A stretch of DNA of 64,000 nt from the NCBI GenBank assembly GCA_011109175.1, contig RDEW01000019.1, positions 48,038 through 112,037 on the forward strand, given 5' to 3'. The notes below the pieces were generated by a model, which did not search any database, had not been told where the DNA came from, and saw only the letters and a list, made by a program, of their open reading frames with translations. This document shows, in pieces, positions 5,913 through 64,000 of this stretch. The DNA is from Dicyema japonicum. Lineage: Eukaryota > Animalia > Dicyemida. Within the stretch, counting starts at the first letter, position 1. Every line of letters begins with the position of its first letter. The translations under genes were made by a program, and so were the position numbers.

Positions 5913-6529
5913 GTGATCAGCATCCAGAACCTATCTGTAAATCTGAAAGTTTGGGGACCACTGTAGTGAAAATTCGATGAGGATTTTTAGACATATATTG
6001 AGGATGGATCCTGCTGCACACGCAAATGATATCATGAAATTATACTTTCTAAGTACCGGTCCATTTCGGGGCAGATTTCGTACAACACTTCCTCTGACCT
6101 TAGATAACGACATAAAAATGCAAAATGCGAATGGAAAATCTTGCTGACTTAGACACCTCCTAAAAATCCCAATCTCAAGAGTATCATGGAGGCGTCTGAC
6201 GGCAAAGATAATCCGGGGTACGGCACAAGCGTTTAGTTTATTGGATAAGTCAATTATTATTATTATTATAAGCACTTATCGCTATGTCATAGGACTTGAC
6301 AAAGCATGTGCAACACGAGTTAGCAAATCACTGGTTAGTTTCATCCACTTCCTCCTATTCAAAGCCGCAGCGCGCAACCAGTCCAGATCCTCTCCACTTG
6401 CAAGATGCCGTCCCANCTTGCTGACTTAGACACCTCCTAAAAATCCCAATCTCAAGAGTATCATGGAGGCGTCTGACGGCAAAGATAATCCGGGGTACGG
6501 CACAAGCGTTTAGTTTATTGGATAAGTCA

Positions 6530-7075
6530 ATTATTATTATTATAAGCACTTATCGCTATGTCATAGGACTTGACAAAGCATGTGCAACACGAGTTAGCAA
6601 ATCACTGGTTAGTTTCATCCACTTCCTCCTATTCAAAGCCGCAGCGCGCAACCAGTCCAGATCCTCTCCACTTGCAAGATGCCGTCCCATTTCTTTGAGG
6701 TCCTCGTCGAGAACGACTGCCAGTGTCGTCCTTGGGCGACCACGGAAACGGGGGGCCTCCAACATGAAGTAATCCTCCATGGCTACGTTCGCGGGGGCAT
6801 CTAGGTCCAGTCGCAGAATATGGCCGAAAAGCCTCCATCGTGTATCCAGAATCTCATTAGAAATTTCTGAGGTCTTCGTCCTCTTATAGAGAAGATTAGA
6901 TGACATCCTCGTATCACTTCTTTCGAACATCATATGCCGTAGTTGGTCTCTATGAAACGCATTAAGCCTCTTCAGTTCATTTCTTGAGCAGGCCCAGGTA
7001 CCAGCGTTATATAGTAGTATGGGTTTCACTAGCGAGTTGTATAATCGAGTTTTTGTTATAATGTCGAAACTCCCC
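6530..7075 (-). mobile_element. 5'-truncated RTE-like LINE 3' end with (TAA)n tail
   Basis: LYNSLVKPILLYNAGTW...RWRLFGHILR...RGRPRTTL...LRAAALNRRKW; ATAATAATAAT tail near 6530-6545; 6253-6415 is a duplicated copy across an N join. Confidence 0.85.
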
Positions 7076-7183: not shown

Positions 7184-9518
7184 ATGAATTTAATAAGATT
7201 GCCAATATTCCGTAATTATAAAATGTAATATATATTTTACTGACTAATCAGACCTCTCACTTATTTTAAAGCTTCGCTCTCCAAAGCGCCCAAAGTACTG
7301 TCATGGAATAAGGTCTAGGGTCCAAACGAGTCGTTCATCATAAATGCCTTTGCTGGGAAGTTGAAATTTGATCACGTGTTCCCATATCCTAAAGGTTTCC
7401 CTTCAAAAGTTTACTCAAGTTTTAACCGACGAAGAATGTGAAATTACCGAATCCATGATCGGACCAATAAACAAATTTTTTAAGGTAAATGCGCGCTTTA
7501 GTGAAAATGACGATTAATTGACGTCATTACTTATGTTAGGAAGGTAATTCAGCCGCAGAGAACGATAAGAGGGGAGAAATCACCATAGAAACCAAACGGA
7601 AATTAGCCGAACTTGGCGCTTACGGACTAATCACACCAACTGAATTTGGTTTTTCCTTTATGCTTACGTAGGCGGCTTGGGTTTGAATTCCAGTCAAACA
7701 TCAAGGCTCAGTGAGGCGGTGGGTCACTTTGACCTTTCCGTTATGATCCACATTGGTGCTCATCAGGTTTTTAGAACCGATTAGTCGTAGTCTATCGGAT
7801 ATCGGGGGATCATAAACTACGGGACGCCAGAACAGAAGAAAAAATATCTCCCCGACTTGGCCTCAGGAAAAAAGATCGCTGCCTATTGTTTGACAGAACC
7901 TTCCGCAGGGTCTGATGCCGCTGTAAGGGCTGAGATAACCACAAGTCTATCAAATCCAATGCAGTCCTCTCTGCTGACGGGAAGCACTACATTCTAAACG
8001 GAAGCAAGATTTGGATCACTAACGGTGGAATGGCTGATGTTATGACCGTTTTTGCTAAGGTTGCTTTAACACGGACAATTTAGACACCGGTGACCGAAGA
8101 TGGCATGGAGAAGATGAAGATGACCGCCTTTATAGTCGAAAGGGAATTTGGAGGGATCACCAGTGGCAATCCTGTAGCTAAAATGGGGATCAAAGCATCC
8201 GAAACATGCGAAGTATTTTTCGACGACGTTCACATTCCTGTGGAGAATGTTCTCGGAGGTTAACAGACTTGGTTGATTATTAGAGGTCGGCAATGGCTTC
8301 CTCATCGCTGTGAGCATCCTAAACATGGGTCGGTCCTCGATCTGTGCGAGCATGTGCGGGACCATGAAGGAGATGTTGACCAGATCAGTTCTCTTTATTT
8401 TAACGGTCAGATAAATTTTGCCTGGCAGAGAGAACAATTTGGCAGCAAAATAGTCAAGTATGGAGTCATCAAGGAAAAGCTGGCGAGGATGGCAATGAAA
8501 ATCTACGCATCTGAGGTCAGGGACCGGTTTTTTAGAGCTTAGTCCATCGGCTACCTACTGGCCGGAAACTACGACCGGAATGTGCCCGATCTGCAGGTGG
8601 ATGCTGCAATTTGCAAGATATATGGATCAGTTAGTGACTTTATATAGTCTAAGGATGCTGCTTGGAGTGTGGTGGATGATGCTATACAAATTCACGGGGG
8701 GATGGGATATATGGCTGTTAATGTTAGTTTTTAATGTTCTAGGAGATTGAGTTGGAAAGATTCGCCAGGGATGCAAGAATTTGTCGAATTTTCGAAGGGA
8801 CCAACGAAATTTTGAGACTTTTTGTCGCCTATAACGGAATTATGGTTATTAATCTTTGATAATGCGCTTAGCATGCAGGAAAGACAATTTCAAATATCAC
8901 CTCATCCAAGAATAGTCTACTTACTCTTTATTCATCAGTGTCTATAGCTGTAACGAGAATCCTCGTGGGTCCGAAAGCTCAAGCACACCTTAAGAAAATT
9001 GTCCACCAGGACCTTTCTGAGAGCGCCGAAAAAGTTTTATTTTTAAATTTTTTTTCAAAATTTATTAATATAATTATACTTTAATTTTATTACTCTAACT
9101 TTAATTTTAGCTTGGAATTTCAATAAACAACTTTTTGAGAATAGTGACGCGTCTGATATTTGTCCATAAAAAGGGACTCAAAGGTTTGTGATCTTGTTTA
9201 CTGATTAGACCGCCAGTTTGAAGTTTATAGAATTGGGGAGGCCGCTATTTCGATTCACGTGATGGCTGCTGTACTTTCGCGGGCTTCGAGCGCATTAGAA
9301 CAGCAGACAGACACATGTAAGCACGAGGCACAGCTTTGCAAAGCGATTTGCATGGAGGTGGGTTCTTGGTTTAATTTGTGTATCAGGAATCTTTGAATGT
9401 TTCAAGATCCTTAGACACGATAAGTAGAAGTAAGGAATTGACTTCATGTCTGTTCGATATTTCTGATAGTATTGTCAAGAATGAGGATTATTTCGTTAAG
9501 ACCCCGCTCGGTATGTAA
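7184..9518 (+). CDS. ACADVL/ACAD9: Very-long-chain acyl-CoA dehydrogenase family (ACADVL/ACAD9), 17 introns
   Basis: Spliced by hand into one ORF: [59 protein letters not shown] (catalytic Glu present); all introns GT-AG, 15 of 17 are 23-29 nt. Confidence 0.93.
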
Positions 9519-26267: not shown

Positions 26268-26410
26268 TTTCGTGGCGGTCTGGCACTGGGCGCCACCTAA
26301 ACAGGTGGATCACATGACGCCACTATAATAGGAAGAAAGAAGAAGAACAGGCGAACAGAACTGAAACTTCAGCCAACTAGCCACGAAGCCCTACATGGCG
26401 CTACGCGGCT
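26268..26410 (-). mobile_element. SINE-A copy (5' half, adjoining gap)
   Basis: Sense strand starts AGCCGCGTAGCGCCATGTAG and contains CCACCTGTTTAGGTGG. Confidence 0.8.
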
Positions 26411-26540: not shown

Positions 26541-28957
26541 ATGCTGTATTAAATCGCACTAAAAAATAGAGGACGGAAAATTCCTTATTTGTTACCATGC
26601 CAGTGGCGTTCCGTTGTGCGGTCTCCCTCATGGCGTGGTTTTGTGAGTGGTGGGATTCTTTTGGCCTCTTCTCCCGTTCTATTCCGTCCCCTTGATGACA
26701 AATCCCATGACAGTCATTCTCTGAAGCCGCAGAAATTGCTTGTTAAACATCTCTTATGTGATTGGTGGATCGCTTTACTTGCTATCATCTTTGCGATCAT
26801 TGCTGTTTGCATAAATGTATCAGTTCCCATTCAGATGGGGTCCCTCGTTAACCTGATCATTTCCCTTTCAGATTCTAGTTCGTTCATTCGTCTCATTGGT
26901 CCGGCAAAGAGTCTCCTGTTGTTATACGTCCTCGAAGGGACTGCCACTTTGGCATACATATACACGATTGGCTGTTATGGGGAGAGACTTTCCTGCAGAC
27001 TAAAAGTGGATGTGTTTGCCAACATTATGGGACGACATACACACTTTTTTGACGCCAACCGATCCAGTGAGCTGGTTAGCAGGTTGGATACTCTGGGTCA
27101 CAGTCAGAGCGACCTCTGATATTCAAGAATTCAAGAGCTTGTTGAAGCAATGCCTGACTGGGGGGATAAAATGCTTTACTCAAGTCGATTTTGATTCATT
27201 TTAGGTCCTCGGTTCCTTCATCGCCCTTTTTCGAATATCTGGTAGACTCACCACGGCTACCTTCGTCATCCTTCCCGTAGTCGTCTCTGCTGGACTGCTC
27301 CTTACATTGATCCTCAGCGAATTATCGGCCACGTGTCAGCTCCAGGTTGTCTGAATGACCCATTCTAGTTATCAAAATCAGTTGTGGTCGCAGATGAGGC
27401 AATCAAGCATATCAAGACAGTAAAAACACTCGCATTGGAGGAGAAGCTAGCATGGTGATATTTCTGACTTACTGTCAGTAACTACTCTCAAGAATGTGCA
27501 CGTGTCAGTCACCTAAATCAACAGTTGGCTTTCGGAATTGGTCTTTTCCAGGGTCTCTCAGATATTGTCTTGAAATGTAGTTTTTAATTTGACCCAAGCT
27601 CTTTCATTGGGAGTTATTTTTTACGGTGGAATGCTGCTGTCTTCCCAGTCCATTACACCTGGGGATCTTACGGCATACCTGACCTCTTTNGTCAGTCACC
27701 TAAATCAACAGTTGGCTTTCGGAATTGGTCTTTTCCAGGGTCTCTCAGATATTGTCTTGAAATGTTGTTTTTAATTTGACCCAAGCTCTTTCATTGGGAG
27801 TTATTTTCTACGGTGGAATGCTGCTGTCTTCCCAGTCCATTACACCTGGGGATCTTACGGCATACCTGACCTCTTTGGGATCTATTCAGAAGTATGGACT
27901 TTTTACTGACTTAGATCATTGGCCACATTTTCTCTGCTCTTCGGAAAGGTGGTGAAACTTAACGCAGCAGCTTCTCTGTTCACTCCTGTTACTTAGATGG
28001 TGATATTTCTAGTTTATTATTCGTATTGAGGGAGAAGAAAGTGGAGGAGGGGCTGTGATTTCGCCGAGCAAACTTCGAGGGAGAATACAGTTTAAAGATG
28101 TCTGTTTCACCTATCCCGGGAGACCGGATGAGGTACTTTTGGGAGCAAATTTTAGAAAGTGTTGGAAAATGTTTACTTGGATATTCCTTCTGGTAGTATT
28201 GTTGCACTGGTTGGCCAGTCTGGGGGAGGTTATGGGCATTTCTCACGTTCTAGGAAAATCCACTATTGTCAGTCTTATGGAAAGGCTCTACGACGTAGAA
28301 AGCGGGTCAGTATTACTAGACGGCAAGGATGTGCGGGATCTCGACCTAAAATGGTTGAGGGGGAAGGTTCTGGCCTATGTCAGCCAAGTAAAAGGTGGTG
28401 TTTTAGATTCCAGGAGCCTTGCCTGTTTGCTACTTCCATAAGAGAGAACATTCGGATAGGAAAACCCTCAGCCAGCGATGAGGAGGTGATTGAGGCGGCC
28501 AAAATGGCTGACGCCCATGAATTTATCTCTAAGTTTTCCAATGGTTACTCAACTCTGGTTGGGGAGGAAGGTCAAGCGCTTTCTGGGGGACAGAAACAGC
28601 GAATTGCCATTGCCAGGGCTCTCATAAAGGATCCTTCAGTGTTAGTTCTAGACGAGGCGACGAGGTCTCGATCTCTTTGACTTTAAGTGCCCTGGACTCC
28701 GAGGCTGAGCAGTCAATCTTCAAATCCTTAGACAAGATTTCAAAGGGCATGAGTTTTAATTTAGTGTAGGAAGGACGGTGATAATTGTTGCCCATAGACT
28801 GAGCACTATCAAGAATAGTGATATAATATATGTGATTGATAGTGGAAGAGTTTGTGAGGTTGAGGAGTCATCTCATGATTAGAATGGTACCCATACAAAT
28901 TTGATGTCTGCGAAGGGGTTGTATCACAAACTTGTTTACACACAAACTAATAATTAA
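26541..28957 (+). CDS. ABCB8: Mitochondrial half ABC transporter ABCB8, 14 introns of 21-26 nt
   Basis: [28 protein letters not shown], Walker [25 protein letters not shown], Walker [20 protein letters not shown]; 27691-27870 duplicates 27504-27689 across an N join. Confidence 0.93.
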
Positions 28958-30013: not shown

Positions 30014-30120
30014 CTGTGGTGCTACATGGCTAATTGGTTGAAGTTTTCGGTTTGTTTTGTCTGTTCCTCTTCTATTCTTTCTTACTAGAATGGCGTCATG
30101 TGATCCACCCGTCTTAGAAC
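30014..30120 (+). mobile_element. SINE-A copy (5' part), inverted relative to the neighbouring copy
   Basis: GGCTAATTGGTTGAAGTTTTC...TGGCGTCATGTGATCCACC. Confidence 0.7.
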
Positions 30121-30172
30121 ATGCCCCTTTTCAACGATTAGCTAAATAACTGTCCTTTACTTTGAAATAAAA

Positions 30173-30499
30173 TTATTATTATTTATTTATTAACCCCGGA
30201 TACACCGAGAAGTTAAAGTAAACAACTAATTAAGTGTATCCAGTTTCCATTTTTACAAAAACAGAGTTCATCCAGAATCAACATAAAAGGTAAGACGTCC
30301 ATTACATGCAGTTGTGGAAACCCCTCCAGTGGAGTGGGGGAGAGCTAATGATCCTTTTTCGTGCCGACCTGGCACTGAGCGTCACCTAGACAAAGGGATC
30401 ACATGACGCCACTATAATAGGAAGAGTAAAGAGGAAGAGTCAAGCAATCAGAAAACTTCAACCGATTAACCACGCACCACCACATGGCGCCACGCGGCT
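30173..30499 (-). mobile_element. SINE-A, full length (about 320 bp) with (TAAA)n-like tail
   Basis: Sense strand runs from AGCCGCGTGGCGCCATGTGG to TCCGGGGTTAATAAATAAATAAT. Confidence 0.8.
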
Positions 30500-30624: not shown

Positions 30625-32346
30625 TTAGATTGCTAGAGTCCTCATACTCAAAAGCTGGGAGACACAATTAGCAGTCAGTCTGGAAGATGCATCTGGCTCC
30701 CAACAGGCATTAATAAGCTCACAAAAAATCCGGAACTCCTACCAAGTAAAAAGCAAACAAACATGGCTGATTGTCCATTCTATCAGCATAGGAGGCCTGT
30801 CCTTCAATCTCCCGACATTATCCTGCATATTCTCGAGCGTGCATTCGTACTTCGAATAAGGGGGAGAATAGTCAAGTCCACCAAAGATAAAAAAACACCA
30901 AACCCGCATTAGAGAGCATCTCCCACACTACCAGCGAAAAGGCATACATGTCGATTGCCAAATATGATAAGTGAGAGCTGTCTACGACTCCCATCAACAA
31001 CTCTGGAGCCATATATCGGACGTCCCCCACCAAAATATAAACCAAAAACTACCTGCGTTCGAATCCGTGGATCTTCACAGCCATCAAAAGCCACTGCTTG
31101 GCTCAGATCGGAAATATGAGCAGAAAACAAATCCCGACTGGCCATCTTGACCAATACTTTTGTCGATTTAATATTCCTGTGAGCAATGGGGGGCTTTCCG
31201 TTCCTCCTCTCGTGAAGATAGGCGAGTCCATTAACGAAGGACCAAACCAGATGAAGTAGTTGATTTCCTGTGAGCAATGGGGGGCTTTCCGTTCCTCCTC
31301 TCGTGAAGATAGGCGAGTCCATTAACGAAGGACCAAACCAGATGAAGTAGTTGATTGTAGTTGAACCTGAATGAGTTTTGACTGACCAAATCAAAAACTG
31401 ATCCCAGGGGGAAATACTCGAATGCAAGGGAGAAGGGGAAGACTTGGTCCTCCATATAGAAGAGGTAGACCAGACTTAACACATTTGGCGAAAGAAATAA
31501 CTCGTCGTGTGCAAGAATATCATGGATTTCCAATTCACTTAGCAAATGAGAAGATTTGGCAGATTTGAAGAACACCAAAGACCCACCAAAAGTTCCTTTA
31601 CTGAACATCTTCGATGAAGTACTCCACTAAGGTTTACGACTGCCAGTACAAGTAGCTTTCGGTGTATTGGTGGCACTTTCATCGCTCTTTGCACCAAAAG
31701 TTCCTTTACTGAACATCTTCGATGAAGTACTCCACTAAGGTTTACGACTGCCAGTACAAGTAGCTTTCGGTGAATTGGTGGCACTTTCATCGCTCTTTGG
31801 ATCAAATTTCTGTCATTCAGTCGCTCTACGTTTCTGCTGAGGACGAAGGAGCGGGCAGAGTAGAGGAAAACGAAGATGACACATCCCAGGATGACTGCAA
31901 CACCAATCCAGACACCGAAAGTGGGGGAATTTAAACCTCTAATAAACTAAATGCTGCCACTTTCAATCACAGGGGGTTTTACGGTTTTGGGAATCATGGT
32001 AGGTCCCCTTTTGCCAGAGTCGGTGAATGAGACGTTATTACAGCCATCAGAATAGCAGCAACAGAGATTGATCCCTCCCTCCATTAATTGGCATAAAGAA
32101 GGAGAGGGGCACATTTCATAGGAGCTACACCCAAGTGAATACTAGATTTAGCATTAAATAAACTATTGTGGCGTTTGATGCCGACCTGACTAGTAAACAA
32201 GCCGAATTTGTGTCAGGGGGACATTGCTTGAGGGTAACTTTGGAAATGCTGTTTGCCTTATAGTAGCAATAGAGGAGGGAATAAATTTCTAAAATGTTAT
32301 GTGATTGATTGCCTGTTAACAAAATAAGTAGGAAGTGGAACTTCAT
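30625..32346 (-). CDS. ACVR2-like: TGF-beta family type II (activin receptor-like) Ser/Thr kinase receptor, probable pseudokinase
   Basis: Signal peptide, Cys box CCCYSDGCN, TM helix GVWIGVAVILGCVIFVFLY, KPPIAHRNIKS, QVGDVRYMAPE, IDMYAFSLVVWEM, CWEPDASSRLTA; no GS box; two internal tandem duplications (91 and 108 nt) probably from assembly. Confidence 0.85.
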
Positions 32347-38220: not shown

Positions 38221-39264
38221 ATTTTGCAATTCTCTCAGTCAAGGAGAATTAAAAAAATGAAAAGGCCGTCGTCCGAAGGGCCCTTCTTCAGATGGGAGGT
38301 AACTAATGGTCATTTTTTGCGGTGCATTAAGTGCACCCTGAGCGCCTCCAGAACTTTTGTAACTGATAGACCACATGACGCAACGTTTTTGACCTACGAG
38401 GAAAAATAATCTGGTTCGGAATAATTTTACTTAATTTTAAAATAACAGTGACATAACATTTTCATTAAAAACCAAACAAAGCGATAGTCATGGGGGATTA
38501 AGTCATTAAAAATCTTACAGTGAGGCCTGGATTTTTTCTCAGAGAATTTCTTCCAAAAATTAACGTAATCTTCTTTCAGTCCGCGTAAATAATAACGTTT
38601 GTACTATGATTCATAGGAGCCGTAAATTTCTCATAAATATATTAAAGAGCAGCACTTAATTTTAAAAATAGTAATTGAAGCCTTTTACGGACAAATGCCA
38701 CTTGACTTATTTTTTATTGTAATGGAGGAGGTTTTAACAACATTAAAATAAAAAACATTTTTTGAGAGAAGATCATTGTTGTCGTATAAATTCCCAACAT
38801 TGTCAGATAAAAATATTCCATGAAAGCTTATCTAATCTTCCACGACCAAAGCACTTCGATTTGATTCTTGCCATTTTTTGAACAAATTAATGGTCCCAAT
38901 AAATTTAAATTTATCGACCCAGAATGCAATTTCCTTCAAGTCCGAGCATGCAAAGACAACAAGAGGGAGACTGGGATCACCTGAATTTTTCATTCTGACT
39001 ATGACGGTGTTTTTCTATAAATAATAAATAAATAGAAAAGTACAAAAAACGTCAACATTTAGCTTAAGTTTGCAAAGTTAATAATTTAAATTTTAGATAT
39101 TTCTATTTGAAAAATTTAACTAGTTTGAATTATAGTATCTATAAATAATAAATAAATAGAAAAGTACAAAAAACGTCAACATTTAGCTTAAGTTTGCAAA
39201 GTTAATAATTTAAATTTTAGATATTTCTATTTGAAAAATTTAACTAGTTTGAATTATAGTATTA

Positions 39265-40292
39265 ATGTCCGACGATGTGGTCAACCTTCAGGACGTTATA
39301 AAAAGATACAGAGAGGATCAACTCACAGCCAGGGCTCTCTTGGGGGCATGTGACGATACAAAATGTTCGTATAGTGAAGTAATTTTATTCTTACCATCTC
39401 AGTCATATGTAAACAGACAGCCAATATATTCCTGCCTCACTTGCAATTCTGGCGAACCTGCAGGGATATGTCTCGCCTGTTCCTACCACTGCCACGACGG
39501 CCATGAATTGATCGAACTTTACACCAAGAGAAACTTCCGTTGTGACTGCGGAAACAAGAAGTTCCCTACAAACTTATGCAAATTGGAGCCGGTATTTAAA
39601 TCCCTTACCAATAACAGAATAAAGATGCAGAAAACTCAGAAAATGACTACAATCACAACTTTCAGGAGAAATACTGCGTTTGTGAGTCGACCTACGACGC
39701 CAACGAGGTTTGGTCAAATTTTCATTTCCAGAGCTCTCTTATGGTACAGTGCATTATCTGTGAGGATTGGTTCCATACACAGGTATTAGCTTACGTAAAT
39801 TTGCAGCACCTGATCTGGCACGAGACTGGTTCGGACTTTGAGGATGGCCAAGAATTAGTCTGTCATCTATGCGCAGAAGCACATCCATTTCTTTATTTTT
39901 ACAAGAAAAACAGTGGATGTCCTTCTTTAACAAAGACCTTCACAGGAAAGGGAACGATTATACTGTCACCAGAGTGGAGGGATGCTACATGCACGTGTGC
40001 TAGCTGCCTAAACATGTTAAGAAATGAAAAAGTCCTATTTTTGTTGACTGATGGGGACTCGTGTCATGAATATGAGAAGAGGGGGCTGAGTTTTGAGTCG
40101 ACAAATTTAGAGCAGTGGATGGAGAATCTAGACATCTCTCAGCAACGCGCGTTATCTGGGGGGATAAAATATTTGATGGAGGAGTTGAAATCTTTTGCAG
40201 CTGACTTTGCTGAGAGTGGGGATGTTGTTACTGATGATGACGTACATGACTTCTTTGAACAGTTAATGGCTAAGAGACCACGGTTGATTTAA
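39265..40292 (+). CDS. UBR7: E3 ubiquitin ligase UBR7, 4 introns
   Basis: UBR box RQPIYSCLTC...AGICLACSYHCHDGHELIELYTKRNFRCDCGN; PHD-like MVQCIICEDWFH; C-terminal DDVHDFFEQL. Confidence 0.93.
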
Positions 40293-42806: not shown

Positions 42807-44797
42807 TTAACTCCAGGATATTGAGACCTCACTAAGTCCCGTATTTATTCCATCCACGACCAATAACTAAATTTTCTAGAAATTATATTACTTTTGCTGA
42901 TTCGTCATAAGAGTATCCTATTTTGATTCCATTCACAGTTACTGATCTTTTAGGCATTGTTACCCCGTTTATTTCAACGGTTTTCAAAATTAGTGACCTT
43001 GACTCGACTGGTCTCACAAGACTGCTAGTTAGGGAGTACTAAATTATCAGGATATCTTTCACTTTACTCCCATTACATCTGAGAGAAAATTTGTGTAAGC
43101 TATATTGTCTGCTTTCATAAGTTTCTAGAATATTAAAGTTCCGCAAACCGAAAGAGACTCCATCATTCCAGAAAAATTCTCCACTTGCGAGTTCTCCGCC
43201 ACAGAGATCACTGCTAGCACAGACTAGTAAACTGAAAGGATTACTTCGACTAAATTAAAGATTACTGTGATATCAACCTTTGTTTTGTCCTCATGGCAGG
43301 TGTTTGAACAGAAATTATTTTCCCACCATAAACATGAATGTTGATTTTATCAATTGTGGTATCAATTTCTAGGAATTGTCCCCTCGAATAAAACTGGGTT
43401 TTCTCGTGAAAGTAGTCGTACCTCATCCCCTTTGGAAAATACCCAACGACAGTGGCGTATTCCTATTGGTAAGTAAACATATAACGAATGCAGGGGAAAA
43501 TAGAATAGCCGACCCCCAAGTGAACTGTTCCTCAACGTCGTACGTGTTGACATCATCGTACCACCTAAAGTGAAGTGAAATTGTAACTTCATAAAAAGAG
43601 GTTGAATAACAGGAGTCCCAAACACATTAGATTGATAAAACAAGGTATATAAATATGGAAGTAACTTATATCTCTCCAATATCATTTTTTTGGCGACCCA
43701 AGTCATCCTTGGACTGAAGGCAAATGGAGTTTTGTCCTTGAGTTACTCGACAAGCTACAGCATGATCCGCATGACTTCTCATAAATGGATAGAATGCCCC
43801 AAACAGGTACCACCTCGTACAAAGCTCTTCCGTTGCTGGTTCTGCAAATCCACAAATGTCTCCCCCAGTCATAGATATCCCAAACATATTCGATCGAATC
43901 ATCGCTAAATTAGCTACCCTCTCATACCAGAAATTGAATTCTTCATGTCGTAAAATGTAGAAACTGAGTCACCACTCCATGTCCCTGAGAAATAGCCATG
44001 AGTCACAAAACTCGACCTCGAGATAATGAACGGTCTCTCGTATGGTCTTATTTTTCTCAAAGCCCTTGAATTACAAAATATAAGGGTAACTCGAAGGTAT
44101 CTTTAGCTTGGAGAGTCGCGTACACACTGTGAACGTCATATTGTATTCCATCACCATGAATCGCATCCATACATATGGTTTTGGTATACAAGTTCGAGTA
44201 GAACATGTCTATATTAGAAATATGGAGTCACTCTGTGGGATGTATGGGGGGTAGTTGTACTTTCCAAAGTCACAAGGCTGCGAAAAGCTTGAGGGGTCGT
44301 TCATATCCTTGACTAAAATTTAGTTCTTACAATCCAAATTCCATCAAATTTGACAGTTTTATGAAATTTTTCCATCTCAAAAGTCCAGTAATCCAATCCA
44401 TTTTTTGACCCAAAATCCACATAATGACATTTTCCTGGCCAAACCTATCAACGTCCCAATACAAGTCACTTCTTGCTTTATGAAGGATTTGTTAGTTTTG
44501 TCACGAACGAAAGCATTCATTTTAACCCCGTCGCTATATGGTTGATACAATCTGTTCTCAGTAGCCACGTGAGGTTCCTGTGGTGAAATAATAAGATGTT
44601 TACGGAAATAATGATATGGTAAAGATCATCCTCGTGTAATTCCCTTGATAACTCTGGAAGATCCCCAAAGTTGTCCCACGAAAATGTGAATTGTCTGTGA
44701 TTGTCCATGTAATCAATATCAGTCCACTGTCCGTCCTATTTTAGTTTTATAATCTTAACTTGGGGAATCCCCTCTTCTTTCATTTTTTGGACGAGGN
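42807..44797 (-). CDS. GAA-like: GH31 alpha-glucosidase (GAA/MGAM/SI-like), 5' part missing, about 14 introns
   Basis: QWTDIDYMD, VWPG, nucleophile WIDMND, acid/base WSGD, GGDICGF, GAFYPFMRSH, RYKLLPYLYTLF; stops at the N join at 44798; last exon duplicated at about 42500-42670. Confidence 0.9.
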
Positions 44798-45389
44798 AGT
44801 ACGAGCTTGTGTTGGTACGAGGGAGGAGCACCAAGAAAGAATGAGGATTTTGGCGGAGCGCATCGGATCACGTGATAGTTAGTTTTGGTTTCACCGTGGT
44901 CTTGGGTGTTAAATTAAATTAAAATTAAATAGAACTAAAAAGTATGGTATAGGTGCTAAAAGAAACTTTTCATGAGACGATAAAAATAATTAACAATGCA
45001 CACTTAAAACAGTACATCTCAATCATCATTTATTTACTATTAAAAGAGTGTTGTGAGAATAATTTTATATAAGCTGTATATATTATTTCATAAATACGAA
45101 TATCGTATTAAATTTTTATTGTTAATTTAGTTACTACTTTATGCTTTACTAATATTTTAGTCAAATAACACAATTATTTAATGCAAAATTAAGTTAACAA
45201 CTACTGGCTGCTATCATAATTGACCGTATTTTCCATCACGATTTGCAAGGGCATGCGCTCAATGAGCCAACTCTTTTCTCTTTCATCATTTTTCTTCTTT
45301 GTGATGAGCGATCCGATTCTGTTTAGCAGGATCAGTAACCTGCTTCCTATGATNAAATTAAGTTAACAACTACTGGCTGCTATCATAAT

Positions 45390-52349: not shown

Positions 52350-52673
52350 ATTATTATTTTATTTATTAACCCCGGATAAACCGAAAAAGAGGTTAAAGTA
52401 AACAACAATTAAGTGTATCCAGTTTCTACTTCTACGGAAACAGAGTCCCTCCGGAATTAGCATAAAAGGTAAAAGACGTCCATACTTGCAGTTGTGGAAA
52501 ACCCCTCCAGTAGAGTGGGGGAGAGCAAATGATCCTTTTTCGTGCCGGCCTGGGCGCCACCTAGACAGGTGGATCACACGAAGCCACTCTAATAAAAAGA
52601 GAGAGAAAAAACAGACAAACAAACAGAAACTTAAACCAATTAGCCACGAAGCACCACATGGCGTCACGCGGCT
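52350..52673 (-). mobile_element. SINE-A, full length
   Basis: AGCCGCGTGACGCCATGTGG ... TCCGGGGTTAATAAATAAAAT; 5' 90 nt duplicated at about 52682-52771. Confidence 0.8.
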
Positions 52674-52884
52674 TAAATTATTCTCTAATAAAAAGAGAGA
52701 GAAAAAACAGACGAACAAACAGAAACTTCAACCAATTAGTCACAAAGCATCACATGGCGTCACGCGGCTTAAATTATTCTTTTAATTGTTGAAGGTTGTT
52801 GATTATTAAAAATTAACTTTTTATTGTTGGTTAAATAAAAAGTGGCTTTATTAAGTAATTTAAAAATAAAATTATAATATTTAA

Positions 52885-59628: not shown

Positions 59629-59904
59629 TAGTAATGGCTTGAAACTTCACCCTCTTACCTGTTAGTAAAACTGCGGCAAATAACTGCTCAATGTGAGTCG
59701 TTGAAGGATTAGTTGGTTAAATGAGAGACAATTAATTACAAGAACCTCATAATGATACGATAAAAAGTATCCCCATAAAGACTTCCATTTAATACCATTG
59801 AACATCGGGAAGAACTAGTTGAATGTATCCAACTCTCAAGGCGGTAGAGGCAGATTCCTCCAATATCACTCAAGTCCATTTAGATTCACCGGAAAAGTAA
59901 GAAT

Positions 59905-60230
59905 TTGTCCAGTATGTACAACTGTGAAAAAAATCCTTCAGTAGAGTGGGGGAAGCAAATGATCTTTTTGTGCCATCCTGGTACGATATGATGGAGGTGG
60001 ATCACATGACGCGAATCGGTTAGAATATAGAAGAAAATAGGAAAGGAAGTGAAATCTGACCAAATATCNCCAGTATGTACAACTGTGAAAAAAATCCTTC
60101 AGTAGAGTGGGGGAAGCAAATGATCTTTTTGTGCCATCCTGGTACGATATGATGGAGGTGGATCACATGACGCGAATCTGTTAGAATATAGAAGAAAAAA
60201 GGAAAGGAAGTGAAATCTGACCAAATATCT
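59905..60230 (-). mobile_element. SINE-A core, duplicated across the N at 60069
   Basis: CAGTAGAGTGGGGGAAGCAAATGATC...GGTGGATCACATGACGC on the + strand. Confidence 0.7.
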
Positions 60231-62000: not shown

Positions 62001-62389
62001 TAATATCCACCTCATCGTTGATGAATATACGAAAGTGATGGAAAATCTCTCGGACAGACAACACAACTTCCTAAAAACGGTGGTCTTCTGGAAACCAATT
62101 GAAGAGAAGACTCTTGCCTACCAGGAATATCCTCGTATTTTCGAATGCTCTTGAAAGATTCCAGACAAAGTTGGAGCAGAGGGAGATGCACTGACATTAG
62201 GATTACTTAATTTAGAGGATAACATTTTCATATTTCCTGTGTTCGGTGTGTTATTATTATTTAATAATAAGTTATGAATAGTTTTATAATTAAGTCACCT
62301 TATTAGATTGAATTTTATTAAAATAATAATTGAATATTAATTTAAAAATAAATTAATAAAATAAACCACAAAATAATTGTCCTAAATTA

Positions 62390-64000
62390 ATGTTGGCTTT
62401 AAAAATAAGACACCCATCATATTCATATAAAATACATGAAAAAATAGGATCAGGATCATATGGAAACGTCTTTAAAGTTCACTTGAAATAATTATTCAAA
62501 GGCTGAGACCTTAACTAATAAAAAAGTACGGGCATTGAAATCAATGTTCATTAAAAGCGGAAGTGATTTTGTGATGATTAAGCAGGAAGTCAGAACGATG
62601 AATACTTGTAGGCACAAAAATGTTGTTGAATTTTATGAGGTCTTTTTGTGGTTAGTCAATGTTTAACTTCAAGTAAAAAAGAATTATGGATTGCCATGGA
62701 ATTTTGTGACGCCGGTCCCTTGAACGACATCGTCCAAGGTTGCTTCAAATTTAAAGGTAGCTTTGGGGCCCCTGCATGAGAATGAAATCGCATATGTAAT
62801 CAAAAATGTCATGGATGGGATATCATTCATTCACTCACAAAAACTCATTCACAGAGATATTAAAGTATTCAGGGATCATAGTTTAGGGGGCTAATATTTT
62901 GATGACTTCAGAAGGACTCGTAAAAATAGGTACCAATTTGATTAACTCTTCAGCTGATTTCGGAGTCTCTGCGCAGTTAGTAGGGACCTTGAATAAGCGT
63001 AAAACCATCATAGGATCTCCATATTGGTAATCTGAGAATATAATCCCTAAGGATGGCACCTGAAGTGATCAATGCGAGGTCAACTGAGGGATATAATCAT
63101 TTATGCGATATTTGGAGTGTAGGGATTTTGGCGATAGAATTGGCGGAGACGTTGCCTCCTTTGTATAGAATCCATCCCATGGACGTTCTCCACATAATTG
63201 CCAAGAGTAACTACGTGAGCCCAGTTTTAACCAATAAAGATCAATGGTTGTCGTAATCATTGCATTTAAGGTCCGCGGATTTCCATTCCTTCATAAAGAG
63301 ACTTCTCACAAAAAATGTCAGAAAAAGACCTCCAGCCGAAGAGTGCTTGGCTGTAACCATCATTTTCACTGACAGCTAAATTTTCTAAGCCGTCCTGATT
63401 TGACGGAAAAGGTCGGACTTTATTTGGTGAACCGATATTTGCACCCAGGAATGGAAATATCAAAAGTGATTATTTTCTATTATTTTTAGAAATATGGCGG
63501 TTTTTCTTAATTCTAATTTAGATGTCTTTGATACCGTCACATTAAAGATTGAGGATCCAAAAGTAGTGGTTTCACTTATTCGTAGAGTTTCCAAGGTACG
63601 CACGTTTGGTCAAATGTTGTGTAGAAAAAGTCAAAATGGAAGAACCTTCGGTAACACTTACTGGTGGATATTAGTAACCTCATTTTAAGAACCGTCAGAG
63701 GACGAAACTGATGAATATTTCGAGCACTTTACAAAATACAGCGACAAGACTATCGTGAAAGTGACGATCGATGACTTCCAAAAATATCCACAGGTTTGGT
63801 AGTCAAGTTATTTAGTCGAGTCCACTAGAAACTGATCAAAAATCTGTACATCTTCCATTTGAATTAAGGCGGACTTACTCTTGGTGTGTTCGAATATAAG
63901 GATTCCCCCAATTTATGGAGCAGACTATTGGTTCGATCCAAATACTCATAGTTTCTATTTCCCTATATTTAGCTCACAAACTGTTCTTGGCTGCTGAAAA
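62390..64000 (+). CDS. MAP4K-like: MAP4K (GCK-I/happyhour-like) STE20 kinase with start of CNH domain; continues past the window
   Basis: IGSGSYGNVFK, LWIAMEFC, IHRDIKGANIL, IADFGVSAQL, GSPYWMAPEV, CDIWSVGI; YWFDPNTH..LFLAAE (CNH start); about 15 micro-introns. Confidence 0.92.

What the first reader, a model, noticed from the sequence alone, without database searches (positions are those of the whole stretch)
30882..31052. Two 22-nt GT-TG introns in one gene: candidate non-canonical acceptor class
Seen (minus strand): CAG|GTAGTTTTTGGTTTATATTTTG|GTGGGG at 31031-31052 and GCGG|GTTTGGTGTTTTTTTATCTTTG|GTGGAC at 30882-30903. Both are exactly 22 nt, U-rich, end TTTG and are followed by GTGG. Removing them restores QVGDVRYMAPE and LDYSPPY, conserved in type II receptors; retaining either shifts the frame. 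The first has no usable AG that keeps RYMAPE; the second has only a 49-nt AG option that deletes the conserved Y.PPY. The other introns of the gene are AG-ended. Inference: splicing here may tolerate TG acceptors, perhaps because position is set by length. Two independent A-to-T errors at the same intron position seem unlikely but are not excluded.
Basis: partly seen in the sequence, partly recalled or inferred. Interest (0 to 1): 0.82.

Follow-up and report, generated by a model that had tools for sequence, protein, structure and literature searches.

The report
Two tiny introns ending in TG
An otherwise intact activin-receptor-like gene of a tiny-intron parasite (probably Dicyema japonicum) holds two 22-base introns that end in TG instead of the near-universal AG; a distant relative has the same intron ending in AG, so either this animal can splice at TG or the gene has only just broken, and no RNA data could be reached to decide.

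Summary
Two 22-nt GT...TTTG segments, each followed by GTGG, lie at 31031-31052 and 30882-30903 on the minus strand. Removing exactly these, plus four GT-AG micro-introns and two assembler-made tandem duplications, gives one open 461-codon activin type II receptor-like reading frame.

A homologue found on a dicyemid contig inside the Octopus sinensis assembly gives new evidence:
- Intron 5 sits at the same codon and phase there and is 19/22 identical, but it ends CAG.
- Intron 4 is absent there, and the coding sequence runs straight through (RSK|VGDCRYMAPE).
- The flanking exons are under purifying selection. The window protein has not evolved faster than its homologue.

Against a common class:
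- None of 42 other curated introns in the window lacks AG (Fisher p about 0.013).
- The two TG introns are the most T-rich of all (64-68% against 38%).

No transcript evidence was obtained.

My reading is that these are real introns spliced at UG (about 0.5). The rivals are a recently disabled gene (about 0.27), mostly retained introns (0.12) and base errors (0.06). The scan has noted GT-TG introns elsewhere in this genome, including a followed-up PSMC3 case. I call this a new variant of a known kind.

The parts
30625..32346 (-). Activin type II receptor-like gene. It has a signal peptide, an ectodomain with the CCCYSDGCN motif, a TM segment and a kinase-like domain with HRN and DLS in place of HRD and DFG. 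The CDS is 461 codons after removing 6 introns and 2 artefactual duplications.
   Evidence: The closest solved structures are ACVR2A/2B.
31031..31052 (-). Intron 4: 22 nt, GT..TG, phase 0, 64% T, A at -8 and -6. Absent from the homologue.
30882..30903 (-). Intron 5: 22 nt, GT..TG, phase 1, 68% T, A at -7. Same position and phase as a 22-nt GT..CAG intron in the homologue, 19/22 identical.
30904..31030 (-). Exon between the two TG introns (VGDVRYMAPE...EMLSNA). The most conserved part of the protein.
   Evidence: pN 0.18 with synonymous sites saturated. Aligns to ACVR2B 187-226.
32142..32163 (-). Intron 1: 22 nt, GT-AG. Shared position.
31937..31960 (-). Intron 2: 24 nt, GT-AG. Shared position.
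31627..31649 (-). Intron 3: 23 nt, GT-AG. Shared position. A second copy lies in the duplicated unit at 31735-31757.
30739..30762 (-). Intron 6: 24 nt, GT-AG. Shared position.
31174..31355 (.). Perfect 2 x 91-nt tandem duplication inside exon 4. It breaks the frame as assembled and is judged an assembly artefact.
   Evidence: The homologue has one copy.
31584..31799 (.). 2 x 108-nt tandem duplication (99%) spanning intron 3. Judged an assembly artefact.

Best explanation
The two segments are genuine spliceosomal micro-introns of a functional, dicyemid-conserved activin type II receptor-like pseudokinase gene, and they are removed using UG instead of AG as the 3' terminal dinucleotide. Shown: the anatomy, the in-frame joins that homology requires, the shared intron position, the intact and constrained gene, and that the duplications are artefacts. 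Inferred: in these 21-27-nt introns the branch A lies only 7-8 nt from the 3' end. Exon ligation is therefore largely fixed by position. The G at -1 is kept, and a U can stand in for the A at -2. The very U-rich body and the common UUUG|GUGG junction may compensate for the missing A.
For: 1. After removing 4 GT-AG introns and the 2 GT-TG introns and collapsing the 2 duplications, the gene is one open 461-codon frame.
2. The homologue on L001 (P0001) has five introns at the same positions. The intron-5 homologue is GTTTGGTGTTTGTTTATCTCAG, at the same phase.
3. The intron-4 site is uninterrupted coding sequence in the homologue, so the window carries a precise 22-nt intron-like insertion between codons.
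4. The exons downstream of each TG intron are conserved at protein level while synonymous sites are saturated (pS about 0.6-0.9; pN 0.18 in the exon between the two introns; pN/pS-based ratio 0.17 downstream of intron 4).
5. Relative-rate tests with three type II outgroups show no acceleration in the window lineage: 25 vs 21, 26 vs 21 and 27 vs 22 unique changes.
6. Both introns have GT, a length of 22 nt, an A at -7/-8, a T at -3 and a G at -1, as canonical introns of this window do.
7. Both non-AG ends are TG and share TTTG|GTGG. From canonical-intron frequencies that context has a chance of about 1e-3 (my estimate). Random decay would not favour one variant.
8. The frame-breaking duplications are assembler artefacts. 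There are 23 two-copy arrays in 64 kb, and 15 of them have a single N exactly at the centre.
9. Other notes of this scan report GT-TG micro-introns in essential genes of the same genome, including a followed-up PSMC3 case. These are leads, not tested here.
10. In humans TG is the one non-AG dinucleotide shown to serve as a U2-type 3' splice site (PMC2374985).
Against: No transcript evidence of any kind was obtained. None of the 42 other curated introns in this window (ACAD, ABC, GH31, STE20-like kinase, UBR7-like, and the same gene) lacks AG. Two of six in one gene (Fisher p about 0.013) fits a gene-specific defect better than a general tolerance. In humans TG never acts as a sole acceptor, and AG>TG mutations activate other AGs. 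The published D. japonicum splice-site logos show AG, although that annotation could only find canonical sites. The two introns are compositional outliers (z = 3.3 and 3.9), so they are not typical introns. A relative-rate test cannot exclude a very recent inactivation.
Confidence: 0.5

Rival explanations
1. The gene is a recently disabled gene or a null allele. The AG of an old intron mutated to TG, and a 22-nt intron-like insertion lacks a working acceptor. The transcripts are then mis-spliced or retain the segments, and the locus is starting to decay.
For: Two of six introns are defective in this gene against 0 of 42 elsewhere in the window. The homologue's version of intron 5 has AG. The acceptor region of intron 5 differs at 4 of 5 adjacent positions (CAG|CC to TTG|GT), which looks like one clustered mutation event. 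The protein is a predicted pseudokinase (HRN, DLS). Human AG>TG mutations abolish use of the site.
Against: There is no stop or frameshift in 1386 nt of coding sequence, and the eight other splice-site dinucleotides are intact. There is no rate acceleration. The HRN/DxS changes are shared with the intact homologue, so they are old and tolerated. Under random decay, both lesions being A-to-T at -2 with the same 8-nt junction is very unlikely. The insertion looks exactly like a host intron (GT start, 22 nt, A at -8, between codons). The first 19 nt of intron 5 are still 18/19 identical to the homologue, so constraint lasted until recently.
Confidence: 0.27
2. The introns are weak or regulated and are mostly retained. 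The UG ends make splicing inefficient, so the main product is a truncated receptor. Retaining intron 5 adds about nine residues and then a stop. Full-length mRNA is a minor, possibly stage-specific form.
For: Intron 5 is far better conserved (19/22) than the four other shared introns (50-62%) and than neighbouring synonymous sites, which suggests a function for the intron sequence itself. Human TG sites are alternative and tissue-regulated. TTTGGTG occurs five times in this 1.7-kb gene, with about 0.16 expected.
Against: The exons downstream of both introns are conserved as protein, so the fully spliced form must matter. The predicted local RNA structures are no better than shuffles (z = 0.5, 0.2 and -1.2). 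No RNA data were available.
Confidence: 0.12
3. The TG ends come from base-call, consensus or polymorphism artefacts. The real or major allele would have AG at both sites, giving ordinary TTTAG|G acceptors.
For: A single change at -2 would make both introns canonical (TAG is the commonest ending, 24 of 42). The assembly is a patchwork of short pieces joined with duplicated ends that differ by 0-8%, built from pooled animals with 1.24% heterozygosity. The public runs hold only about 55% of the sampled 31-mers of this stretch.
Against: This needs two identical errors 149 nt apart in one contig piece, with none in 42 other introns. Substitution errors of this kind are rare in short-read consensus. 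The same pattern is noted in many other genes of this genome.
Confidence: 0.06

Closest known systems
TG alternative 3' splice sites of human U2-type introns (Szafranski et al. 2007, PMC2374985)
   Same: A GT donor with a TG terminal dinucleotide, the G at -1 kept, often in a TTG context, and flanking intron sequence conserved between species.
   Different: The human sites are only alternative and lie within 28 nt of a required AG. They are never the sole acceptor, and AG>TG mutants are not spliced at TG. Here TG would be the only in-frame acceptor of 22-nt introns. The nearest downstream AGs are 28/30 nt away (intron 4) and 32 nt away (intron 5), and using them would delete conserved residues.
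Canonical Dicyema micro-introns (Aruga 2007 PMC2222250; Lu 2019 PMC6736024; Zverkov 2019 PMC6543705; MBE 2026 PMC13644364)
   Same: Length 21-27 nt, a GT(A/T) donor, an A-rich spot 7-8 nt from the 3' end, and conserved positions.
   Different: The published logos and all 42 other introns curated here end in AG. These two end in TG and are much more T-rich (64-68% against 38%).
Lineages rich in non-canonical introns (the appendicularians Oikopleura and Fritillaria)
   Same: Compact animal genomes in which the U2 spliceosome is reported to process non-GT-AG introns. This rests on my own knowledge and was not checked here.
   Different: There the variation is mainly at the donor or at both ends, and it is frequent. 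Here it is rare and limited to position -2 of the acceptor.
Activin receptor type 2A/2B (ACVR2A/B)
   Same: The best solved-structure matches, the CCx4CN ectodomain motif, a single TM segment and no GS box detected.
   Different: The catalytic HRD and DFG motifs are HRN and DLS (DMS in the homologue), so the protein is probably a pseudokinase. Overall identity is low.

Membership tests
U2-type spliceosomal micro-intron of dicyemids | GT (or GC) at the 5' end | tested here: met
   Both start with GT. The other registers allowed by the G|GT microhomology have no canonical ends.
U2-type spliceosomal micro-intron of dicyemids | Length within the local intron range | tested here: met
   22 nt. The 42 curated introns span 21-27 nt with a mode of 23.
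U2-type spliceosomal micro-intron of dicyemids | AG at the 3' end | tested here: not met
   Both end in TG. All 42 other introns end in AG.
U2-type spliceosomal micro-intron of dicyemids | Candidate branch A 7-8 nt from the 3' end | tested here: met
   A at -8 and -6 in intron 4 and at -7 in intron 5. Canonical introns have A at -7 in 19 of 34 and at -8 in 15 of 34.
U2-type spliceosomal micro-intron of dicyemids | Precise removal restores a conserved reading frame | tested here: met
U2-type spliceosomal micro-intron of dicyemids | Intron position shared with a homologue | tested here: inconclusive
   Intron 5 is shared, with the same codon and phase. Intron 4 is absent from the one homologue available, which could mean gain here or loss there.
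U2-type spliceosomal micro-intron of dicyemids | Removed from mRNA | not testable with these tools
No protein of this organism was found in the three word-seeded searches.
TG-AG tandem acceptors (human type) | A functional AG acceptor within 28 nt of the TG | tested here: inconclusive
   For intron 4 the downstream AGs are at 28 nt (out of frame) and 30 nt (in frame, deletes VGDVRYMAPE). For intron 5 the nearest is at 32 nt.
U12-type intron | RTATCCTT donor and TCCTTRAC branch site | tested here: not met
   The donors are GTAGTT and GTTTGG, and there is no branch consensus.
Pseudogene | Stops or frameshifts in exons | tested here: not met
   There are none once the two assembler duplications are collapsed.
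Pseudogene | Accelerated or neutral protein evolution | tested here: not met
   The relative-rate tests are not significant with three type II outgroups. pN is far below pS. A very recent death is not excluded.
TGF-beta superfamily type II receptor | Cys-rich ectodomain with a CCx4-5CN box, a TM segment and a Ser/Thr kinase domain closest to ACVR2 | tested here: met
   CCCYSDGCN. The Pkinase pieces are collinear. ACVR2A/2B are the top PDB hits.
TGF-beta superfamily type II receptor | Catalytic HRD and DFG motifs | tested here: not met
   HRN and DLS in the window, HRN and DMS in the homologue. The protein is probably a pseudokinase.

The most novel reading that the evidence does not exclude
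Dicyema has a small class of constitutive GT-TG micro-introns: very U-rich, 22-23 nt, with a UUUG|G-type junction. They would be spliced by a U2-type spliceosome whose exon-ligation step accepts U at -2 because the 3' site is fixed by its 7-8-nt distance from the branch point. These would be the first sole-acceptor TG introns in an animal. Acceptors could then drift from AG to TG without killing a gene, as at the conserved intron 5.
Probability: 0.42. Interest if true: 0.78.

Novelty: new variant of a known kind. Interest (0 to 1): 0.6.

Why it matters
The 3' AG is among the most invariant signals in eukaryotic gene expression. In humans TG works only next to an AG. If an animal with 22-nt introns uses TG as a sole acceptor, that would show 3' splice-site choice can be set mainly by geometry. 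It would also give a natural system for studying the second catalytic step. On the practical side, the published D. japonicum gene models were built with tools limited to canonical sites (TopHat and AUGUSTUS). Genes with such introns would therefore be mis-annotated or missing. The question can be settled directly with public RNA-seq, and the orthologous AG/TG pair found here is a clean test case.

Tried and rejected
1. RNA and DNA reads. The look-up of sequencing runs listed five runs.
2. Transcript-derived proteins. The HMMER representative search found only the octopus-assembly homologue. Three word-seeded searches found no protein of this organism, so this route gave no spliced sequence.
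3. Synteny. 20 kb around the homologue shares nothing with the window except the gene and distant TE-like matches. Orthology against old paralogy is unresolved. The lack of any shared repeat family suggests a different species, although only 20 kb was compared.
4. Homology-free intron censuses by open-frame bridging were swamped by noise, with GT-AG enrichment of only 1.1-1.2 fold. I dropped them in favour of curated junctions in conserved genes.
5. Neither intron has another copy in the window.
6. RNA structure around the introns is no more stable than shuffles.
7. I fetched P0025 to check for an ancient intron position. Its gene has only one unrelated 61-nt intron.
8. The tandem duplications were considered as pseudogene lesions and rejected as such.
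9. A U12-type reading, DNA-level excision and recursive splicing were considered. There are no U12 motifs. Excision of a 22-nt segment has no precedent, and recursive use of the regenerated GT would delete conserved codons.

Full report
**What is there.** On the minus strand the window carries a gene from 32346 (Met) to 30625 (stop). It encodes a signal peptide, a Cys-rich ectodomain with CCCYSDGCN, a hydrophobic TM segment and a kinase-like domain. Pieces of the kinase match Pfam Pkinase collinearly. The best solved-structure matches are activin receptors 2A and 2B. The catalytic HRD and DFG motifs read HRN and DLS. Earlier notes of this scan and the 21-27-nt introns identify the genome as very probably Dicyema japonicum (PMC6736024, PMC13644364).

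**The observation.** The gene has four further introns. All four are GT-AG and 22-24 nt long. Removing the six introns gives one open frame of 461 codons.

In-frame canonical alternatives exist, but they remove or scramble conserved coding sequence:
- For the first intron, the alternative from the same donor is a 52-nt GT-AG intron that deletes VGDVRYMAPE. The three options that keep RYMAPE start far upstream and replace about ten conserved residues before it.
- For the second intron, the shortest GT-AG alternative is 49 nt and deletes GLDYSPPYSK.

A G|GT microhomology at both ends allows other boundary registers. None of them is canonical.

The gene also contains a perfect 2 x 91-nt and a 99% 2 x 108-nt tandem duplication. 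As assembled, these break the frame or insert a stop. The window holds 23 such exactly two-copy arrays (62-274 nt). Fifteen of them have a single N within 2 nt of their centre, and 15 of the 20 single-N gaps lie at such centres. One example lies inside the neighbouring ABC transporter gene. These are unmerged overlaps of assembly pieces. The homologue described below has single copies. I therefore collapsed the duplications and do not count them as lesions.

**A homologue from another dicyemid.**
- An exhaustive HMMER search with the exon just upstream of intron 4 gave one close hit, P0001. NCBI names it 'activin receptor type-2B-like [Octopus sinensis]'.
- It lies on a 959-kb contig of GCA_006345805.1.
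- The locus has six 22-26-nt GT-AG introns and the same domain order. The proteins are 40% identical, 178 of 442 aligned residues.
- The contig is therefore dicyemid DNA inside the octopus assembly.
- It shares no repeat family and no synteny with the window in the 20 kb compared. It is probably a different, deeply diverged species.

**What the comparison shows.**
- Five intron positions coincide.
- Intron 5 is at the same codon and phase. In the homologue it reads GTTTGGTGTTTGTTTATCTCAG, so it is 19/22 identical and ends CAG. The junction CAG|CC has become TTG|GT in the window.
- At the intron-4 site the homologue's coding sequence is continuous (...SRSRSK VGDCRYMAPE...). The window therefore carries a precise 22-nt insertion between codons.
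- Synonymous sites are saturated (pS about 0.6-0.9). Non-synonymous divergence is much lower, with pN 0.18 in the exon between the two introns. The sequence downstream of each TG intron has therefore been read in the frame that only exact removal provides.
- Relative-rate tests with three type II receptor outgroups show no acceleration in the window lineage: 25 vs 21, 26 vs 21 and 27 vs 22 unique changes.
- HRN and DxS are shared by both genes, so the pseudokinase state is old.

**How common are non-AG acceptors here?** I curated junctions in the conserved genes of the window, using anchor peptides and listing all frame-consistent introns. The genes were acyl-CoA dehydrogenase (11 junctions), an ABCB-type transporter (12), a GH31 glucosidase (about 11), a STE20-like kinase (7) and a UBR7-like gene (1). 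Every junction has a GT-AG candidate of 21-27 nt, or in one case possibly GC-AG.
- For 42 curated introns, including the four canonical ones of this gene, the modal length is 23 nt and T content is 0.38 +/- 0.08. The ending is TAG in 24, AAG in 11, CAG in 6 and GAG in 1. In the first 34 of these, A is enriched at -7/-8.
- Against that set, 2 of 6 introns without AG in one gene is unusual (Fisher p about 0.013).
- The two TG introns are also the most T-rich of all, at 0.64 and 0.68 (z = 3.3 and 3.9).

**Weighing the readings.**
- Against random decay: the reading frame and the other eight splice-site dinucleotides are untouched. Both lesions are the same A-to-T change at -2. Both produce the same eight-base junction TTTG|GTGG, which by my estimate from canonical frequencies has a chance of about 1e-3. 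The inserted segment looks like a host intron. The first 19 nt of intron 5 remain 18/19 identical to the homologue.
- Against a general tolerance of TG: such introns are absent from the rest of the window. Human data show TG working only next to an AG and never after AG>TG mutation (PMC2374985).
- Other notes of this scan list GT-TG micro-introns in essential genes of this genome. One follow-up, on PSMC3, reached the same conclusion, also without RNA. That raises my prior, but it is not independent evidence.
- I settle on real introns spliced at UG (0.5), a recently disabled gene or allele (0.27), weak introns that are mostly retained (0.12) and base error or polymorphism (0.06).

**What could not be done.** No RNA or raw DNA reads were examined. 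No protein of this organism was found in the three word-seeded searches of the 5.8-billion-protein collection. The published annotation used TopHat and AUGUSTUS, which I take to be limited to canonical sites, so its AG-only logos cannot speak to this question.

**Unexplained.**
- Intron 5 is far better conserved (86%) than the four other shared introns (50-62%) and than adjacent synonymous sites.
- TTTGGTG occurs five times in this 1.7-kb gene against about 0.16 expected. Two of these copies lie in coding sequence at the Gly-rich loop.
- Predicted RNA structures are not significant.

Noticed in passing
whole window, e.g. 2080-2403, 6140-6689, 27503-27877, 31174-31356, 31584-31806: There are 23 exactly two-copy tandem duplications (62-274 nt, 92-100% identical) in 64 kb. 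Fifteen have a single N at their centre. They are unmerged overlaps between assembly pieces and they break genes (the ABC transporter and this receptor). Any frame analysis on this assembly must collapse them.
   Followed up: yes
L001:4378-5888 (GCA_006345805.1 contig VCDQ01004456.1): A 959-kb contig of the Octopus sinensis assembly carries a gene with six 22-26-nt introns that is homologous to the window gene. It is annotated as an octopus 'activin receptor type-2B-like' protein of 222 aa (one exon plus read-through). It is almost certainly DNA of a dicyemid parasite inside the host assembly, and so a usable second dicyemid genome.
   Followed up: partly
30882-30903 (-) and L001:5611-5632: Intron 5 is 19/22 identical between two genes whose synonymous sites are saturated. 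The other four shared introns are 50-62% identical. The first 19 nt of this intron seem to be under selection for an unknown reason.
   Followed up: partly
30879-31590 (-): The heptamer TTTGGTG occurs five times in the gene (six counting the duplicated copy), out of 15 in the whole window on both strands. Two of the copies span the TG 'acceptor' junctions and one is the 5' end of intron 5.
   Followed up: partly
7319-9515 (+): An acyl-CoA dehydrogenase (VLCAD/ACAD9-like) gene. All 11 junctions examined have GT-AG introns of about 18-55 nt, mostly 23-27. I did not find the non-consensus donors noted earlier for this stretch, beyond the weak GTT/GTA consensus.
   Followed up: partly
26553-28954 (+); 42886-44867 (-); 62360-63376 (+); 39253-40289 (+): Further conserved genes with micro-introns: a mitochondrial-type ABCB half-transporter, a GH31 alpha-glucosidase, a STE20/MST-like kinase and a UBR7-like PHD protein. 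One ABC intron (28747-28769) may be GC-AG.
   Followed up: partly
30040-30480: Just downstream of the receptor gene there is an inverted pair of about 45-nt segments containing GGATCACATGACGCC. Similar segments recur near 26300, 52400-52790 and 59900-60230. This looks like a SINE/MITE-like repeat family.
   Followed up: no
L003:3001-4549 (GCA_022750525.1): A type I TGF-beta receptor-like gene from another small-intron genome has HCN in place of HRD in its catalytic loop. Degenerate catalytic loops in TGF-beta receptors may recur in reduced parasites.
   Followed up: no
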